From Vitrella brassicaformis CCMP3155 (Eukaryota; Protista; Chromerida), in the NCBI GenBank assembly GCA_001179505.1, contig CDMY01000310.1:62989-126988 (forward strand): a stretch of DNA of 64,000 nt, in the 5' to 3' direction. The position numbers were made by a program, and so were the translations under genes. This document shows, piece by piece, positions 1-57,356 of the stretch; the stretch's first letter is position 1; each line of letters begins with the position of its first letter. The notes under the pieces were generated by a model that worked only from the letters and a program-made list of their open reading frames with translations, did no database searches and was not told the DNA's origin.

Positions 1-640
1 ACACGCTGAGCGACAGAAAGATATACACGAGACAAGAGTCAGGGATTTCATTGGCTGGCTGGCTCATTTACTTGTTGATGTGCGTCTTGTCTGCGTCGGA
101 ATTCGGTCTCTGACTCAGAGCTGACTGCACCAATTGCACCTGCACAACACACACACACGCACACACATCCGTGCAGTGCACCACTCTCTCCGCTCTCTGT
201 GTATGTTATGTGTGTGTCTCATTTCTATGCCAGTCGTGACGGAGTCATTGTGTTGCCGTTGTTGTTGTGCGAAGGGTCATTGGAGAGCAGCAATGAGGCA
301 ATCTGGCCGAGTGCATCGACTGACTCAGTGTTGAGACCGGATAAAAGCGTGCCTAGCTCGCTCAAAGCTCGCGACTCCAGAACAACCCGGCAGTTGCGTG
401 TCGTCGTTTGATGGTGCGTGAAAGACATGGGACTTGGCCGTCAGGCCGCTTAGGACATTTCGTGAAACCGCTCTCTCTCTCAGAACAACCCGACAAGCCT
501 TCAGATCCGTACACACACGCATCAGGTCATCCTGCTGATTTGAGCGGGGAGTGGCGTCGTGCTGCTGATGGGTGGCTTGTGTGAATTGTGGAAGAAGACC
601 TGCACACACACCGATGGATGGATGGATAGATGTGTGTCAG
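1..640 (-). CDS. Partial paralogue of the 6062-7279 hypothetical gene; runs off the left edge of the window
   Basis: 1-330 is the near-exact reverse complement of about 6580-6925, and 505-630 matches about 6430-6570. Includes exons GLLPQFTQATHQQHD..DALGQIASLL..TPSRL and VQLVQSALSQRPNSDADKTHIN. Confidence 0.55.
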
Positions 641-1083: not shown

Positions 1084-2439
1084 ATGATTCAGGCGTGGAC
1101 GACGTCTTGCCTCTCGAGGAATGGTGGGGGGGATCAGCGAAGTGAGTTGATGAATCTGTGTGACGTCTTCCAGTCCGACGAGGACCATTACGGCAAGGGG
1201 CTGATGCTGAAGACCAACACTGACGAGCTCTATGTGATCACCGCCGCACACGTCGCCGTTGGCGCGACGAAGGTGAAGACCGACATCGGCAACAAAGAGC
1301 AGGAAATGGCCGTCAAGATGGCGTGGATGCACGAGGGCTACCTCGCTGATGGACACCCAGATCTCGCCCTACTAAGGATTGAGCACAACGACATCGTCCG
1401 CGCCGCACTCCGCGCCAAGCCACTTATTGCAGCCGACAATGTCAACCTCCGGCACGAGCTGTGTTCTGTCGACAAACAGCGGTTCTTCAAGGGCGAGATC
1501 ACGGAGATCCGTTCAGAGGCGCCATCGTGTGTGGCTACCGCGGCGGCAGCGGGTTCTACGGCTGGCGCAGTGGGCCCTACGGCTGGGGCACCGACTGCCG
1601 GGTCGGACCCCAGACGCATGTTGTGGCTGCTGCTCTCGGGCATCACGTCAATGCCAGGCGACTCGGGAAGCCCTATGGTGACTGCCGACGGATATCTCGG
1701 TGGTGTCGTCCACGGCGTGTCCCCACAGACATCCAAGAGCAAACGGCACATGAGCAGCACCACCAACTCTGTCACTGTCCGAGCTCACCACCCCCTCCTC
1801 TACATCGCTCCCCTCGATTCTCTCCGTTCGCCCAGCGAAAGTTTCGTCGCAGTCCCTCGTAAGGAGGACAACAAGCATCTCTACGAGGCCCTGGAGCTGC
1901 TCGAGCTGATGCCGCCCACCTTCTCCATCAAGAAGAATCCGATGATGACCATTGCCGGCTACAAAACAAGCTACGTCACGCCGGCGGAGTCGCAGCTCCA
2001 GGAGGGGGATGAGGCCGATGAACCTTGGATGAAGGCTCTCAACCGACTTGAGATCCGCCTCAGCAAGCAGATCAGCCGCGTGAGCGAGCAGATCAACAGC
2101 ATGAGAGGGTATGAGAAGGGCGAGATGGCCACAGAAGCGAGCTTCAAGAGCCTGCGAGAGCACCTCATGCAGCACTTCGACATCGCCGAGGCGGACATTG
2201 ACTCGATGACGGTCACGGATCTCTTCATGAAGCTCTTCAATGAGCTCGAGAAGGACCCCTTTCCCGAGGTGCGCACACAGTCAACACACATGTGCGCCCA
2301 CCCGACACCGAGCCGCGACGCTTTCTGAGTGTTGTGATGTGTTGTGCTGTGTCTTGTCTGTGTGTAGTGGGTGATGCTACAGTTGCAGTTCTCGAAAGCT
2401 GCTCATGTGCCCCCACCGAAGCTGCGGCACGGCGGCTGA
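1084..2439 (+). CDS. Trypsin-fold (clan PA) serine protease with C-terminal helical region, copy 1; exons 1084-2268 and 2368-2439
   Basis: Triad motifs ITAAHV (His), PDLALL (Asp) and GDSGSP (Ser). GT-AG phase-0 intron; exon 2 (WVMLQLQFSKAAHVPPPKLRHGG*) has the same length and stop as in copy 2. Confidence 0.85.
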
Positions 2440-3859
2440 TTGAGTGAGGTCGCTGGTTTAGCACGTCTTTGGCTGCATCAGAGGGTCGCTGTTGGCAGCC
2501 ACTGGAGCATCAGACACGTTTCAGACCTATCAGCTAGAAGCGCCACTGCGTTTGCGTTGTCCTTCACTTGTCGACTGATGGCTTGATGGTGAAGCCTGAA
2601 TGGTCTCTGGCATTTCGTATCTATCGCATGTCGAAATACACGCACCCCACCGAGCATGTCAGTAAGGAGGCTGCTGGTGTGCTGTGTCTGGCTGATCCGA
2701 GAGGTGCAAGATCTGCAGCTTGACCTTTCAGCACACACACGTCTGTCGCCCACACACGAGGGTCCATCACTCCGCTCACTTGCAGTAAGCAGTCAGCCGG
2801 GCCGCGAGGGTGGATGTGCAGACAAACAGATAGACTCGGGCCTCATCCATCAGATACAACGCAGACACCATACATGCATCCCGGCCACGTTTGGTTCGGT
2901 TGTGTGACAAAGCCAAGGACAAGACGCGTGCCAAGCCCTTCGTGGGGTGTGCACGGATCTCATCCTCGACCATGCCATGCAAACCAACCGAACGGCGACA
3001 CATCCATCCATGCACATCGAACGAACCATCCGGATCTCTCTTAGTGTCCATGTCTGTCTGTCTGAATGTAGGTCTGTCGGTCGGTCGGTCGGTCGGTCCG
3101 TGTTGATGCCTCTCTGACAGGTAAGTGAGACAATACTTGCGATGTGTGAATCGCCTCGTTCGTCTCGTGCCGCGGCAGTGAGGCGGAAACACACACCGAC
3201 CGACAGACAAGACGCTCTCCCCTCTCTGTTCGCTGGTAGGGACTGCACAGAGAAATGAAAAACACAGCTGCTGCTCATCCCGTTGCACCCTACCCCTCCT
3301 CTCGCTTGTGGGAAAAACGTGTTGCTTCCATCCATCCATCTCGCTCTCTACAAGTGCGTGCGTGTGCGTGCCGCCGACCCGCCAAAAGGAACATATCGAC
3401 ATCTGTCCTGCCTGCCTTCCCCGCGAGTCACGTCAACACTACTGACACGACTGGCTACATTCGTCTGGCTCTCCATGCACACATGCGTGCTAACGTGCCG
3501 CCGTCATTGCCCACATCAAAGCTCACCCGTCGATCAATCATCGGTAGTGATGTAAAACGCTCACCACCAAGTGAGTACGAAAGACTTCATTCGGAATGAA
3601 TGGAATAGACAGAAGAAGCCGAGAAAGCCACCCCCAACCCCACTCCACCCCTCCCCACATGCAAGAATGCATACATGGGCCCCTCCCTCCCCCTATGCCA
3701 ATTAGTAGCTAGTGGTGGTGACTGAGTGATAAAATCGTGGATGCTCTCTCCCACGTGCTGTGTTGGGTGCGTGTGCGTCGCTCACTCATTCACGAAAACT
3801 GCGCCCCCGCCGCTTGAAAGTGTGTGTACGTGTGAAGGTGTGTGGCCCTGCCAGTGTGT

Positions 3860-5500
<1,641 letters not shown>

Positions 5501-5565
5501 GATCGTGTCGTCGCTGGCAGAACAGAGGGGTGGTGGTCTTGGGTTGGGTTGGTCTGCGTGGGCGA

Positions 5566-5667
5566 GGCAACAAGCTCCCTTGCTTGCGTTACCAAGCTAG
5601 AGGTTCGAACGGTGTAGATCTCAGCCGGCGCAGCTCCTGTGAGCACACCAGCACCCGCGCTTGTGCC
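5566..5667 (-). ncRNA. TPP riboswitch-like aptamer (variant) in the THI4 5' region
   Basis: Minus strand reads GGCACAAGC GCGG GTG CTGGTGT GCTC ACAG GAGC TGCGCCGG CTGAGA TCTACA CCGT TCGAA CCT CTA GCTTG GTAACG CAAGC A AGG GA GCTTGTTGCC. P1, P2, P3/P3a, the UGAGA junction, GAACCU, the P5 hairpin and AGGGA occur in TPP-aptamer order, 65 nt upstream of the THI4 ATG. Confidence 0.88.
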
Positions 5668-6061
5668 GAAAAGCCAAAGATTCTCGAAGGTGGTTTTGTG
5701 GTAGTCGCGGTTAAGCTCGCGGATACCCTGATCGCTCAAACCCGGCACAATTCCTCTCTACGCTGACTGTGCGTGTTATCTGGTGCCAGGCATGCCTTTT
5801 CGGCGATTCCATTGCAAGCAGTCGAGGCGATTCATCATTCATACGGGTTGGGAAGGATTAGGAAGGATGGGAAGGATGTCCATCCACTTCAGGCAATGCA
5901 CCCCTTTTTCGTGATTCATCACTCGCTCATATACTGTACTACATATGATTGTCCGCCCGTACATATACATACGTGTATATGTCCACACACACACACAGAG
6001 AGAGATACAAGGACAGGAAGCTGTGCTGTGCGTGTGACTCCTCTCTCTCTGACGCGCAAAG

Positions 6062-7279
6062 ATGGTGGCGATTCTCGTGGCTGTCTTGCTGTTGCTTGCA
6101 CCAGCGAGCGGTGCCGAGATGAGGCTGCCGCGCAAGTCACGATTTGTTCAGCATGGCGCTGGTGGCGGCATGGGCACTGCGGTGAGCTCGAGTGACTCAG
6201 AGTCGCTGAAAGCCATGATGGACGACTCTTTAAAGCCATGTGAGCAACCAGACAGACAGACAGACAGACAGAGGCAGAACGATCACTGTCTCTCTTTGCA
6301 TGTGCGTGTGTTGCAGTGAAGAGCGAGATTCGCAAGATAGAGAGCGCACTGAACATCAACGACGCAGGCACACAGTCAAGTCAGTGTCTCCCACGGAGAG
6401 AGAGAGACAGACAGCCAGACAGACAGAGACACACATCCATCCATCCATCCATCCATGTGTGTGTGTGTGTGTGTGCAGGTCTTTTTCCACGATTCACGCA
6501 AGCCACCCATCAGCAGCACGACGCCACCACTCCCCCCTCACATCAGCAGGATGACCTGATGCGTGCCTTCAACGCCCTCGGTCTCAACACCGAGGCAGCT
6601 GACGCACTTGGCCAGATTGCGTCATTGCTGTTCGCCAATGACCCTTCGCACAACAACGACGGCAACACAATGACTCCGTCACGACTGGCATAGAAATGAG
6701 ACACACACATAACATACACAGAGAGCGGAGAGAGTGGTGCACTGCACGCGATGTGTGTGCGTGTGTGTGTGTTGTGCAGGTGCAATTGGTGCAGTCAGCT
6801 CTGAGTCAGAGACCGAATTCCGACGCAGACAAGACGCACATCAACAAGTAAATGAGGCAGTCAGCAGCAGGCCAGCCAATCAAATCCCTGACTCTTGTCT
6901 CGTGTATATCTTTCTGTCGCTCAGCGTGTTGGCGAATTGGCGACAGTCGATGCAGCAGCAGCAGTTGCCGCAGACACAGCAGTTGATGGCATCACCGCCA
7001 GTCTTCAACAACAATGCACCGAATGCACCGTTCATGGTGAGTGAGGGAAAGCCACAAAGCAAACGACAAAACACACACATGAATGGAATGTGGTCTATGC
7101 ACACCAGGCACCTCAGTTCATGCAGCAGCCACAGGTGATGCAGCAGCAATAGTAAGACACACAAAATGACAACACACCCACACCTGAATACGTGTGTGTC
7201 TGTGTGCAGTTGGCCACCGATGGCACCGATGCCATCTTGGCCAGTCGTCGCATTTGCACAAGGCCAGCCTCAGCCCTGA
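6062..7279 (+). CDS. Hypothetical protein with signal peptide and Q/P-rich C-terminus, about 7 exons
   Basis: N-terminus MVAILVAVLLLLAPASGA. Phase-consistent exon chain ends ..NNVLANWRQSMQQQQ..APQFMQQPQVMQQQYWPPMAPMP..GQPQP*; one junction requires a GC donor. Paralogue at 1-640. Confidence 0.55.
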
Positions 7280-55087: not shown

Positions 55088-55118
<31 letters not shown>

Positions 55119-57356
55119 GTGGTGGGAATGGCGGACACGTCATGGCGGGTCTGTTCGCCAGCAAGGGCCATGACGTGAGCCTCCTCGTGTCGGCACCACA
55201 TCATGTTGACAAGGTGCGAAGACACACACACACACACACACACACACAGAGGGAGAGAGAGGGCACAGCTGCGAGCACACTGCGATACCCGTCTGTGTGT
55301 GTCCCTCTATAGTGGCTGAGTGGGATAGAGGCCGGTGGCTTGACGGTGCATTACGTCGAGGGCGACCGCAAAGTCAAAGGCACACCGATAACCGCCACAC
55401 ACAACCCTGCTGACGTACGCCAGAAGGACAGACAGACAGCTGTACGTGATCTGCATAGCCACTCCTATGTGTGTGTGTGTGTTTAGGTGGTGCCCTACGT
55501 CGATTTGATTATCATCGTGATCCCCGCCAAGTACCACCAACCCATGATCGAAGCCATGGCACCACACTTCAGGTACATCACGCGCACCAAACACACACAC
55601 ACACTCACACACACACACACATCCCTGTGTGTCTGTCAGGCCTGGTCAGTGGGTGTGTGCGGTCGAGGGCGCCTGGTGGGGCATCCCGCCGTCGGTCTTC
55701 GGACCCAACACGCAGCAACTCGTGTTCGCCGAGATCCAGTGTTTGCCTTGGGCGTGCAGGGCCACCGAGTAGGCTAAGCTGCCAATGCAATGCATACCAA
55801 ACACCAATAGACCGACGTCCATGCCATGCCATGCCGTATCGCATTGTGTGTGTGCGCGTGTGTGTAGGTACGGTCGTTATGTGGAGGTGTTTGAGGAGAA
55901 GGATTTGGTGGAGATCGCCGTGTCGCCGTCGAAAGACGGCAGGGAGGTCGCCCGCATACTTCAGCAACTCATGGACATTCCCTTCAAAGCACACGGTGGG
56001 CACATGGGCAGACAGACAGACAGACAGACAGGGAGGGAGGGAGGGAGGGAGGGCCGGTGGGAGGGCTGACTGACATACACGTTTATTGTGTCACGTATTG
56101 TGTGCCTCTTGCTGGCTGGGTGGCTGGCTGGCTGCAGGATCGTTGCTGGCAATGGCGTTGAGCGCTCCGTGCAATTGGGTGCATCCCGCCGTCATGTACG
56201 GACACTTCGGTAAGGAGGAACGAACAGACACACTCACACACATAGCTGACCCGCCCCTTTATTCATGCGTCACACACGTGTGTGTGTGTGTGTGTGTGTT
56301 GTGCAGCCGAGTGGGACGGGAAGCCGTTTCCGCGTTCCAAGGTGCCGCTGTTCTACCATGACATCACCCAAGACACCGCTGACATGCTGGAGCGGCTCGA
56401 CGATGAGTACCGACAGCTGAAAACACAGCTCGAACAGGTAGGTGCCTACAGAATGACACATGAGGGAAGGCCGCCTGCATTCCTTCACACACGTACTACA
56501 AATGAGATGCTCTCTCTGTGTTGTGTGTGACGTGCCGTGACGTGCAGCGTTGCCCGTTGTTGGATTTGTCAGCCATCAAGCCGACGAAGGAGCTGCTGAT
56601 GGAGTACTACCACGGCAAGATCACCGACGAGAGCACCACCCTGTCGTGCTTCGCCTCCAACCCCGGTACGGTACACACCTTCAATGAGTGCATCAAGGAA
56701 TCGAGCATGGATTGAGATGGAGCGACGATTTATCTGTCTGTCTGTGTGGTTGCGGTGCCCATCCATTAGGTTACGACACGTTGTCGTCTCCTGTGGTTGA
56801 TGTGGGCGAGGGAATGGTCGTGCCCAACTTCGACTACAGGTCAGTCACCCACCCGACAGAGACACACACACATGGCTGGCTGTGTACAGGTATCTGAATA
56901 GCGACATTCCCTTCGGGCTGGTGGTCACCCGTGGCGTCGCACAACTCGCCGGCGTGTCCATGCCGACGGTGGACTTCCTCATCCGATGGAGCCAGGAGAA
57001 GCTCGGCAAGGAATGGCTGCTCGGCGACAAAGTAAGTCACCATACACACACACGCAGAGGCAGTGAGACATCTTTGCCTTTCTGTGTCTCAATACAGCTG
57101 TGCGGTCGCGACATGGGGAAGACCCGCGCGCCCCAGGTTTTTGACTGCCACACACTCGACGAGTTCGTCAAAATATGTCTCCCAGAACTCACCATACGGA
57201 CCAGGTACACCACACTCACACACTGCACACCCTGGATTGCATGATCACGCACGCCATATTCTCTCTGTCCTCAATTGCTGTAGGCGTGACAAGGAGGCCC
57301 AGAAAGAGGAGGGCGGCGTCACCCAGGAAGAGCCCCCGGCCGTGTGTGCCGTCTGA
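54685..57356 (+). CDS. Opine dehydrogenase (octopine/tauropine/nopaline DH family), about 16 exons
   Basis: LKICVAG/GGNGGHVMAG (Rossmann), FAEIQCLPWACR, NWVHPAVMYG, PLFYHDI, PNFDYR/YLNSDIPFGLVVTRGVAQLAGVSMPTVDFLIRWSQEKLGKEW, KTRAPQVF. Confidence 0.92.

What the first reader, a model, noticed from the sequence alone, without database searches (positions are those of the whole stretch)
5572..5606. Pyrophosphate-sensing arm of the aptamer is rewired: possible altered ligand specificity
Seen: the P4/P5 arm reads CCU-CUA-GCUUG-GUAACG-CAAGC-A-AGGGA, whereas the consensus is CCU-GAU-CnGG-nUAAUn-CCnG-CGn-AGGGA. The conserved G of J4/5 and the CG of J5/4 are not in their usual positions, P5 gains a G-C pair, and L5 is UAAC rather than UAAU. 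The pyrimidine pocket (UGAGA) is intact. Established: J4/5 and J5/4 bind the diphosphate through Mg2+. Inference: this may sense thiamine, TMP or an HMP-type pyrimidine rather than TPP, which would make it a variant class. It could also be a decaying aptamer.
Basis: partly seen in the sequence, partly recalled or inferred. Interest (0 to 1): 0.82.

Follow-up and report, generated by a model that had tools for sequence, protein, structure and literature searches.

The report
Rewired thiamine riboswitch before algal THI4
The leader of the thiazole-synthase (THI4) mRNA of the alga Vitrella brassicaformis carries a thiamine-pyrophosphate riboswitch aptamer whose phosphate-sensing loop has been replaced; the same replacement is conserved in a group of bacteria, so it is probably a working variant and would be the first seen in a eukaryote.

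Summary
The aptamer lies on the minus strand at 5559-5668, and the arm at 5603-5576 reads CCU-CUA-GCUUG-GUAACG-CAAGC-A-AGGGA.

- **Identity.** It is a full-length TPP-family aptamer scoring 38.9 bits, below Rfam's cut-off of 54.3. It sits in the unspliced 5'UTR of Vitrella brassicaformis THI4.
- **Not an assembly error.** The arm is identical in the genome record and in three transcript assemblies.
- **Derived state.** Chromera velia THI4 has a canonical aptamer at the same place (72.1 bits; GAU / CGC).
- **Where the changes fall.** All uncompensated changes lie in the pyrophosphate core (G60, U62, G78, U79) or L5. P1, P2, P3 and P5 are kept by compensatory changes.
- **Main new result.** Nearly the same rewired core (CCU-U-UA-G…C-A-AGGGA) is invariant in Phycisphaerae thiF-thiS-thiG-thiH terminator riboswitches. 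That clade also has canonical orthologues. This argues against decay.
- **Literature.** McCown et al. 2017 mention bacterial TPP variants with a mutated pyrophosphate core that bind thiamin, TMP and TPP alike, and state that eukaryotic aptamers conform to the consensus.

My best reading is a phosphate-blind thiamin-vitamer sensor (about 45%); the ligand is untested. L5 UAAC is ordinary variation. The scan noted this same stretch before in this genome, and I know of no note on other DNA.

The parts
5559..5668 (-). TPP-family aptamer (P1-P5) in the 5'UTR of THI4
   Evidence: RF00059 full-length match, 38.9 bits. The MFE fold gives P1, P2, P3 and the P4/P5 hairpin.
5619..5624 (-). J3/2 CUGAGA, pyrimidine-binding T-loop, intact
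   Evidence: Aligned to the invariant CUGAGA of the model; the same motif is present in Chromera.
5601..5603 (-). P4 5' strand CCU
5598..5600 (-). J4/5 CUA in place of G60-A61-U62
   Evidence: Chromera has GAU; the Phycisphaerae variant has UUA.
5582..5597 (-). P5 (GCUUG/CAAGC, with a new G-C pair that takes up C77) and L5 GUAACG
   Evidence: P5 pair probability 1.0. Two pairs are flipped relative to Chromera's CAAG/CUUG.
5581..5581 (-). J5/4 reduced to a single A (canonical C77-G78-N79)
5576..5580 (-). AGGGA (P4 3' strand plus junction GA)
5571..5575 (-). P1 3' strand GCUUG, pairs with CAAGC at 5659-5663
   Evidence: P1 probability 1.0.
5501..5696 (-). Unspliced 5'UTR of the THI4 mRNA; it contains no AUG
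   Evidence: RNA contigs of X10 and X11 run without a break across 5300-5696/5693; sequence read.
3860..5500 (-). THI4 (thiazole synthase) coding region in 8 exons: 5500-5302, 5212-5163, 5085-4882, 4775-4707, 4640-4437, 4336-4213, 4142-4021, 3937-3860
   Evidence: Splice joints in RNA contigs of three runs. The exons read give exactly protein P0002 of Vitrella brassicaformis CCMP3155.

Best explanation
The element is a genuine, expressed member of the TPP-aptamer fold in the 5'UTR of Vitrella brassicaformis THI4.

Its pyrimidine-sensing half and three-way junction are canonical. Its pyrophosphate-sensing internal loop is not. The canonical G60-A61-U62 / C77-G78-N79 loop has been replaced by C-UA on the 5' side and a single A on the 3' side. 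A new G-C pair takes up C77. Both guanines that hold the Mg2+-diphosphate are therefore gone.

I read it as a functional variant, not a wreck. It would be a sensor that recognises the aminopyrimidine end of thiamin compounds but no longer discriminates by the diphosphate. It would then report the pool of thiamin, TMP and TPP and repress the costly single-turnover THI4 enzyme.

The aptamer stays in the mature, intron-free, AUG-free leader about 30 nt from the 5' end. The likely output is therefore hindrance of ribosome scanning or translation, or reduced mRNA stability, not alternative splicing.

Shown here: the sequence, expression, derived state, compensatory maintenance, and a conserved bacterial look-alike. 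Inferred: the ligand range, the direction of control, and the output mechanism.
For: 1. Full-length RF00059 alignment with an intact CUGAGA, ACC, GAACCU and AGGGA.
2. It lies directly before THI4. Chromera velia THI4 mRNA has a canonical aptamer at the same position (72.1 bits), so the element is ancient and the Vitrella core is derived.
3. P1, P2, P3 and P5 differ between the two species only by pair-preserving changes. Of the strongly conserved (upper-case) model positions outside the arm's loop positions, none is changed without compensation. Three of the 8 upper-case loop positions of the arm (J4/5, L5, J5/4) are changed (U62, U71, G78). G60 is also changed and there are two indels. Hand count; chance of such clustering is about 0.007.
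4. The strands CCU-Y-UAG and GC-A-AGGGA match, at 6/7 and 8/8 positions, the arm of TPP-like aptamers before thiF-thiS-thiG-thiH in 8 distinct Phycisphaerae/Planctomycetota sequences. Their ThiF proteins are 64-93% identical to the ThiF of L092. There the arm is invariant while P3, P3a and the tail vary.
5. Those bacterial variants have an intrinsic terminator like that of the canonical orthologues L135 and L136, so they are working OFF switches.
6. G60, C77 and G78 are the diphosphate/Mg2+ contacts (PMC3764141; bioRxiv 10.1101/2025.01.21.634073). In the latter, mutants at A61/C63/G78 stopped responding to thiamine addition.
7. McCown et al. 2017 report bacterial TPP variants with a mutated pyrophosphate core that bind thiamin about as well as TMP and TPP.
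8. The leader is unspliced in three RNA data sets and has no AUG.
Against: - No binding or regulation data exist for Vitrella or for the bacterial look-alikes.
- Vitrella has C where the bacteria have U. The bacterial U-A pair becomes a C.A mismatch, and the nearest-neighbour model prefers a register-shifted P4 (probability 0.8-0.9 against 0.04 for the canonical register).
- Only one Vitrella lineage could be examined. The diverged relative in marine-sediment metagenomes has no coverage of the leader.
- The sequence signature of the published bacterial variants is not given, so identity with them is unproven.
- Diatom TPP aptamers with a perfect consensus do not regulate at all (PMC9544697), so function in non-green algae cannot be assumed.
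- No 5'UTR scanning-block riboswitch is established in nature.
Confidence: 0.45

Rival explanations
1. The aptamer still selects TPP. The YUA bulge and the new G-C pair would build a different Mg2+/diphosphate site, so only the wiring differs and not the ligand.
For: In the Phycisphaerae group, canonical and variant forms replace each other before the same operon with the same terminator. The ThiF tree requires at least two switches. This is easiest if both forms do the same job. A61 and C77 can still be aligned.
Against: Both guanine O6 ligands (G60, G78) are missing and C77 is predicted to be paired. PP-helix mutations at A61/C63/G78 abolish the response to thiamine addition in engineered thiM switches. 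The published remark on core-mutated variants reports loss of discrimination.
Confidence: 0.2
2. It is a relic. The aptamer lost ligand binding in the Vitrella lineage and persists only as a structured leader, possibly still affecting translation constitutively.
For: The score is 33 bits below the Chromera orthologue. A C.A mismatch and a predicted register shift of P4 are present. There is no second Vitrella lineage to show conservation. Diatom aptamers do not regulate.
Against: Changes are confined to the diphosphate core and L5, while all helices and the pyrimidine pocket are intact. Random decay would not be expected to land on the same loop, at 14 of 15 positions, that is conserved in bacteria.
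Confidence: 0.2
3. It senses a shorter pyrimidine precursor (HMP, HMP-P or HMP-PP) to balance the thiazole branch against the pyrimidine branch, as the bacterial thiS-motif HMP-PP riboswitch does.
For: Both origins of the rewired core stand before thiazole-branch genes: THI4 here and thiFSGH in Phycisphaerae. HMP-PP control of thiS-associated genes has a precedent (PMC6478431). The pyrimidine pocket is intact.
Against: About 20-25% of canonical bacterial TPP aptamers in my sample also precede thiS, thiO or thi4, so two hits are only weakly significant (about 0.05). The bacterial variants keep the OFF-type terminator of their canonical relatives, whereas HMP-PP logic is activating. The architecture is unlike the terminator-embedded thiS motif.
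Confidence: 0.1
4. The deviation is a sequencing or assembly error.
For: None.
Against: The 31-nt arm is identical in the genome record and three transcript assemblies and in RNA contigs of separate studies. DNA runs from three studies hold 95-100% of the sampled words of 3800-6300.
Confidence: 0.01

Closest known systems
Canonical TPP riboswitch aptamer (Rfam RF00059; E. coli thiM and A. thaliana THIC structures)
   Same: The five-helix three-way-junction fold, the CUGAGA T-loop, GAACCU/AGGGA, an L5 with UAA, and a position before a thiamine gene.
   Different: The diphosphate core (G60, C77-G78, the 'GCG' motif) is replaced by CUA / A with C77 paired. The score is below Rfam's gathering threshold.
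Bacterial TPP variants with a mutated pyrophosphate-binding core that bind thiamin, TMP and TPP alike (McCown et al. 2017, citing Roth et al. in preparation)
   Same: Mutations are confined to the P4-P5 diphosphate core of an otherwise typical aptamer.
   Different: Their sequences are not published in the library I could search, so the same signature cannot be verified. They are reported only in bacteria, and the paper states that eukaryotic aptamers conform to the consensus.
Phycisphaerae/Planctomycetota thiF-thiS-thiG-thiH leader aptamers found here (L025, L031, L092, L133, L137, L140, L142, L143, L144)
   Same: Arm CCU-Y-UA-G-[P5]-C-A-AGGGA; RF00059 scores below the cut-off (36-48 bits); they control thiazole-moiety synthesis.
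   Different: They are bacterial, have a P3a hairpin and an intrinsic terminator, and have U (pairing with A) where Vitrella has C. P1-P3 sequences are unrelated, so the likeness is convergent.
Chlamydomonas THI4 and fungal NMT1 TPP riboswitches (alternative splicing)
   Same: A eukaryotic TPP-type aptamer in the leader of a thiamine-synthesis gene; the Chlamydomonas one also precedes THI4.
   Different: No leader intron or alternative splice form is seen here. P2 is GCGG, not the AGGG splice-acceptor form described for green algae and plants. No uORF is present.
HMP-PP riboswitch (thiS motif)
   Same: Associated with thiazole-branch genes and senses a pyrimidine-bearing thiamine compound.
   Different: It is a tiny terminator-embedded aptamer with a different fold and is an ON switch.

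Membership tests
TPP riboswitch aptamer (RF00059) | P1-P5 three-way-junction secondary structure over the whole model | tested here: met
   cmscan aligns model positions 1-105. The MFE fold reproduces P1, P2, P3 and P4/P5.
TPP riboswitch aptamer (RF00059) | Pyrimidine pocket: J3/2 CUGAGA T-loop and the ACC / GAACCU junction | tested here: met
   All letters are identical to the consensus.
TPP riboswitch aptamer (RF00059) | Diphosphate core: G60 in J4/5 and C77-G78 in J5/4 | tested here: not met
   G60 is C, G78 is A, U79 is absent, and C77 is predicted to pair with a new G.
TPP riboswitch aptamer (RF00059) | Rfam gathering score of 54.3 bits | tested here: not met
   38.9 bits. The Chromera orthologue scores 72.1.
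TPP riboswitch aptamer (RF00059) | Cis-association with a thiamine synthesis or transport gene | tested here: met
   It lies in the 5'UTR of THI4, and the transcript carries it.
TPP riboswitch aptamer (RF00059) | Selective binding of TPP | not testable with these tools
   Needs in-line probing or ITC.
Core-mutated, phosphate-blind TPP variants (McCown 2017) | Mutations restricted to the P4-P5 diphosphate core of an otherwise typical aptamer | tested here: met
   see the counts in the report.
Core-mutated, phosphate-blind TPP variants (McCown 2017) | Thiamin bound about as well as TMP and TPP | not testable with these tools
   This is a biochemical property. Only the published statement is available.
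Core-mutated, phosphate-blind TPP variants (McCown 2017) | Same sequence signature as the described variants | not testable with these tools
   The source study is cited as 'in preparation' and was not found in the library.
YUA-bulge arm of Phycisphaerae thiFSGH aptamers (defined here) | 5' strand CCU-Y-UA-G and 3' strand G-C-A-AGGGA flanking a P5 hairpin with a GUAA loop | tested here: met
   Vitrella has CCUCUAG / GCAAGGGA against CCUUUAG / GCAAGGGA in the bacteria.
YUA-bulge arm of Phycisphaerae thiFSGH aptamers (defined here) | Y pairs with the A before AGG, giving a four-pair P4 | tested here: not met
   Vitrella has C opposite A. The predicted P4 register differs.
Splicing-type eukaryotic TPP riboswitch | Aptamer inside or next to a leader intron with alternative splice sites | tested here: not met
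   RNA contigs of X10 and X11 are colinear with the genome over 5300-5696, and X12 over 5300-5573. All seven coding introns are seen and none in the leader.
HMP-PP riboswitch (thiS motif) | Small aptamer embedded in a terminator stem | tested here: not met
   No such Rfam match in the window, and the architecture is the TPP fold.

The most novel reading that the evidence does not exclude
A eukaryote has independently evolved the same phosphate-blind (thiamin-vitamer) version of the TPP aptamer that a bacterial clade uses for its thiazole operon. It would deploy this version in an unspliced 5'UTR to control translation of THI4. That would be a natural scanning-block riboswitch, and a case of convergent re-engineering of a ligand pocket across domains of life.
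Probability: 0.3. Interest if true: 0.8.

Novelty: new variant of a known kind. Interest (0 to 1): 0.62.

Why it matters
Eukaryotic TPP riboswitches are described as conforming to one consensus (PMC5473149). This one does not, and the departure sits exactly on the ligand's diphosphate contacts.

The same solution is fixed in a bacterial clade. That gives a defined, testable sequence signature (CCU-Y-UA-G…C-A-AGGGA) for a specificity variant that current Rfam thresholds miss.

The work also shows that chromerid algae, the photosynthetic relatives of apicomplexan parasites, carry TPP aptamers in THI4 leaders without leader introns. This raises the question of how a riboswitch acts there. Chromera (canonical) and Vitrella (rewired) form a natural matched pair for experiments.

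Tried and rejected
- **Closer Vitrella relatives.** A word search with the exon-1 ORF found nothing. The marine-sediment relative in run X13 covers exons but not the leader.
- **Exact Vitrella signature elsewhere.** There were no hits in 185,579 bacterial and archaeal genomes. Two JGI metagenome contigs matched, but these are chance matches: there is no P5 hairpin and no TPP hit.
- **Relaxed scan.** The scan with GCHAGGGA mostly returned canonical aptamers with a one-nucleotide-longer J5/4 (CGCA or CGCU).
- **Other THI4 transcripts.** L145-L147, from unidentified eukaryotes, have no TPP aptamer.
- **P1/P5 strand swap.** P5 (GCUUG/CAAGC) and P1 (CAAGC/GCUUG) could in principle swap partners as a built-in switch. 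The alternative fold is far less stable and has zero ensemble probability.
- **Loose contig end.** The end at 5614 in run X12 has no match in the window and is most likely an assembly chimera.
- **Thiazole-gene association as evidence for a new ligand.** The base rate among canonical aptamers is about 20-25%, so this is only suggestive.
- **Papers not held.** Moulin et al. 2013, Croft et al. 2007 and Weinberg et al. 2017 could not be read.
- **Joined exons.** Full-length comparisons used the database protein P0002.

Full report
**What is there**

The finding lies on the minus strand. The reverse complement of 5559-5668 aligns end to end with Rfam's TPP aptamer model RF00059. The score is 38.9 bits, with E = 8.5e-6 in a 1.2 kb search and 4.5e-4 for the whole window. 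The family's gathering score is 54.3, so a default scan reports nothing.

Against the model:
- G60 is C.
- A U is inserted.
- U62 is G, which can pair with C77.
- U71 is C.
- G78 is A.
- U79 is missing.

CUGAGA, ACC, GAACCU and AGGGA are unchanged.

**Gene and organism**

Downstream on the same strand is an eight-exon gene for the thiazole synthase THI4. The ATG is at 5500 and the stop at 3860. I read the exons from the sequence. Every intron is confirmed by spliced RNA contigs in three runs.

The exon model equals protein P0002, the THI4 of Vitrella brassicaformis CCMP3155. Locus L007 is the same place in assembly GCA_001179505.1. I did not type a joined protein; full-length comparisons used P0002.

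**Expression and correctness**

RNA contigs of X10 and X11 run colinear with the genome across 5300-5696 and 5300-5693. So the aptamer sits in the mature leader, about 30 nt from the 5' end and about 60 nt before the AUG. No leader intron is seen, and the leader has no AUG.

The 31-nt arm is identical in the genome record and in three transcript assemblies. DNA runs of three studies hold 95-100% of the sampled words. The deviation is not an assembly error.

**The orthologue**

Chromera velia THI4 transcripts (L001-L006) carry a canonical aptamer at the same position in the 5'UTR. It scores 72.1 bits, with the arm CCU-GAU-CAAG-GUAAUA-CUUG-CGC-AGGGA.

The element therefore predates the split of the two chromerids, and the Vitrella core is derived. 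The orthologue does not share the substitutions.

Between the two species, P1 (GAAGCU/AGCUUC against CAAGC/GCUUG), P2, P3 and P5 (CAAG/CUUG against CUUG/CAAG) all differ, but always in a pair-preserving way.

Counting the strongly conserved (upper-case) positions of the model:
- Outside the arm's loop positions (J4/5, L5, J5/4), none is changed in Vitrella without compensation.
- Three of those 8 upper-case loop positions are changed (U62, U71, G78).
- G60 is also changed and there are two indels.
- The chance that three changes all fall in those 8 of 37 positions is about 0.007 (hand calculation).

This is not the pattern of free decay.

**Thermodynamics**

P1, P2 and P5 have pair probabilities near 1. 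The canonical register of P4 (CCU/AGG) has probability 0.04. A shifted register (CUCU/AGGG with a 1x1 A.A loop) has 0.8-0.9 and is 2 kcal/mol better. The open internal loop that normally holds Mg2+-diphosphate is predicted to be nearly closed.

**Established roles of the lost bases**

G60, C77 and G78 are the highly conserved diphosphate/Mg2+ contacts (PMC3764141). A61, C63, C77 and G78 build the pocket (bioRxiv 10.1101/2025.01.21.634073). In that study, mutants at A61, C63 and G78 were selected as no longer responding to thiamine addition while still responding to synthetic ligands. 'GCG' is used as the pyrophosphate-binding motif in algal aptamers (PMC9544697). Vitrella has GCA.

**The same rewiring elsewhere**

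A scan for the exact Vitrella signature found nothing in bacterial genomes and only two chance matches in metagenomes.

A relaxed scan returned 120 bacterial loci. Most are canonical with a longer J5/4 (CGCA or CGCU). Three Planctomycetota MAGs have the arm GAACCU-U-UA-GCAG(U/C)G-GUAAU(G/U)-C-CUGC-A-AGGGA.

These aptamers score 43-45 bits, again below Rfam's cut-off. They precede thiF-thiS-thiG-thiH, the thiazole branch.

I fetched nine further distinct loci of ThiF relatives:
- All have a TPP-like aptamer before thiF.
- In all there are eight distinct variant sequences.
- Their ThiF proteins are 64-93% identical to the ThiF of L092.
- The arm is invariant except at two positions outside the core (the P5 bulge and the last L5 base) and one G-to-A change in AGGGA in L144. 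P3, P3a and the 3' tail vary and covary.

Two orthologous leaders, L135 and L136, are canonical (CCUGAA…CGU-AAGGGA; 46.5 and 64.7 bits). On a ThiF tree they are successive sisters of two variant-bearing genomes. At least two switches between the forms occurred.

Variant and canonical leaders are followed by closely similar intrinsic terminators. The variant is therefore a working OFF switch in bacteria.

Vitrella's strands (CCUCUAG and GCAAGGGA) match the bacterial ones (CCUUUAG and GCAAGGGA) at 14 of 15 positions. P1-P3 are unrelated and P3a is absent in Vitrella, so this is convergence and not transfer. The one difference, C for U, turns a U-A pair into a C.A mismatch.

**Literature**

McCown et al. 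[quoted passage not shown] The primary study is cited as in preparation, and I did not find it. I found no paper on riboswitches in chromerids. So the kind is known in outline for bacteria, but a eukaryotic case and this explicit signature appear to be new.

**Interpretation**

Most likely (about 45%) this is a functional, phosphate-blind thiamin-vitamer sensor that represses THI4. Because the leader is unspliced and lacks uORFs, it probably acts on scanning, translation or stability. That last step is inference only.

Rivals:
- TPP selectivity retained through a different pocket (about 20%).
- A relic (about 20%).
- An HMP-type ligand (about 10%).

The HMP-type idea is weakened in two ways. 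The bacterial variants share an OFF platform with their canonical relatives. And 20-25% of ordinary TPP aptamers in my sample also precede thiS, thiO or thi4.

The diatom precedent of non-regulating consensus aptamers keeps the relic and no-regulation possibility alive.

**Corrections to the finding**

- The strand is minus.
- L5 UAAC occurs in canonical bacterial aptamers and carries no weight.
- The orthologue does not share the substitutions.
- Raw data exclude a consensus error.

**Limits**

- No binding data are available.
- Only one Vitrella lineage could be examined.
- I could not check other thiamine genes of Vitrella.

Noticed in passing
L001:61-167 (Chromera velia THI4 mRNA; also L002-L006): There is a canonical TPP aptamer (72.1 bits, above Rfam's cut-off) in the 5'UTR of Chromera THI4. 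The leader has no AUG before the start codon. I found no paper reporting riboswitches in chromerids.
   Followed up: partly
L025:4329-4442, L031:515-623, L092:3305-3407(-), L133, L137, L140, L142, L143, L144: A clade of Phycisphaerae/Planctomycetota thiFSGH leaders carries TPP-like aptamers with a rewired diphosphate core. All score below Rfam's gathering score, so standard annotation would miss them.
   Followed up: yes
window 5520-5545 (minus strand); L001:180-200: Both chromerid leaders share a C-rich stretch after the aptamer (ACC..CCCAACCC). In Chromera, the MFE fold of the whole leader pairs GUACCC with the P2 strand GGGUGC, which could be an anti-aptamer pairing.
   Followed up: partly
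window 5614 (run X12): One RNA contig matches from 5614 upward and continues on the other side into 190 letters that occur nowhere in the window. It may be a chimera or an unknown junction inside the aptamer.
   Followed up: partly
window 3790-5400 (run X13 and other marine-sediment metagenomes): Marine-sediment metagenomes hold short contigs mostly 85-95% identical to the Vitrella THI4 exons and to part of its introns. This points to an uncultured close relative of Vitrella outside corals.
   Followed up: no
window 134-428 and 6316-6785: Near-identical ORF translations occur in opposite orientation on both sides of THI4 (for example 134..334(+) and 6543..6785(-)). The gene sits between the arms of an inverted duplication.
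   Followed up: no
window 1084-2328 (+): A 414-aa ORF corresponds to the trypsin-family gene (PF00089, 418 aa) annotated next to THI4 in L007 and L008.
   Followed up: no
window 55088-55248 (-), 5946-6063: The weak microRNA-family hits (mir-466, mir-297, mir-3149) appear to fall on GT/CA-rich stretches (read for 5946-6063; not checked at 55088-55248) and look like composition artefacts.
   Followed up: no
L135:758-955: The canonical Phycisphaerae orthologue carries an insertion of about 90 nt in P3. L142 and L144 also have long, repeat-like P3 insertions.
   Followed up: no
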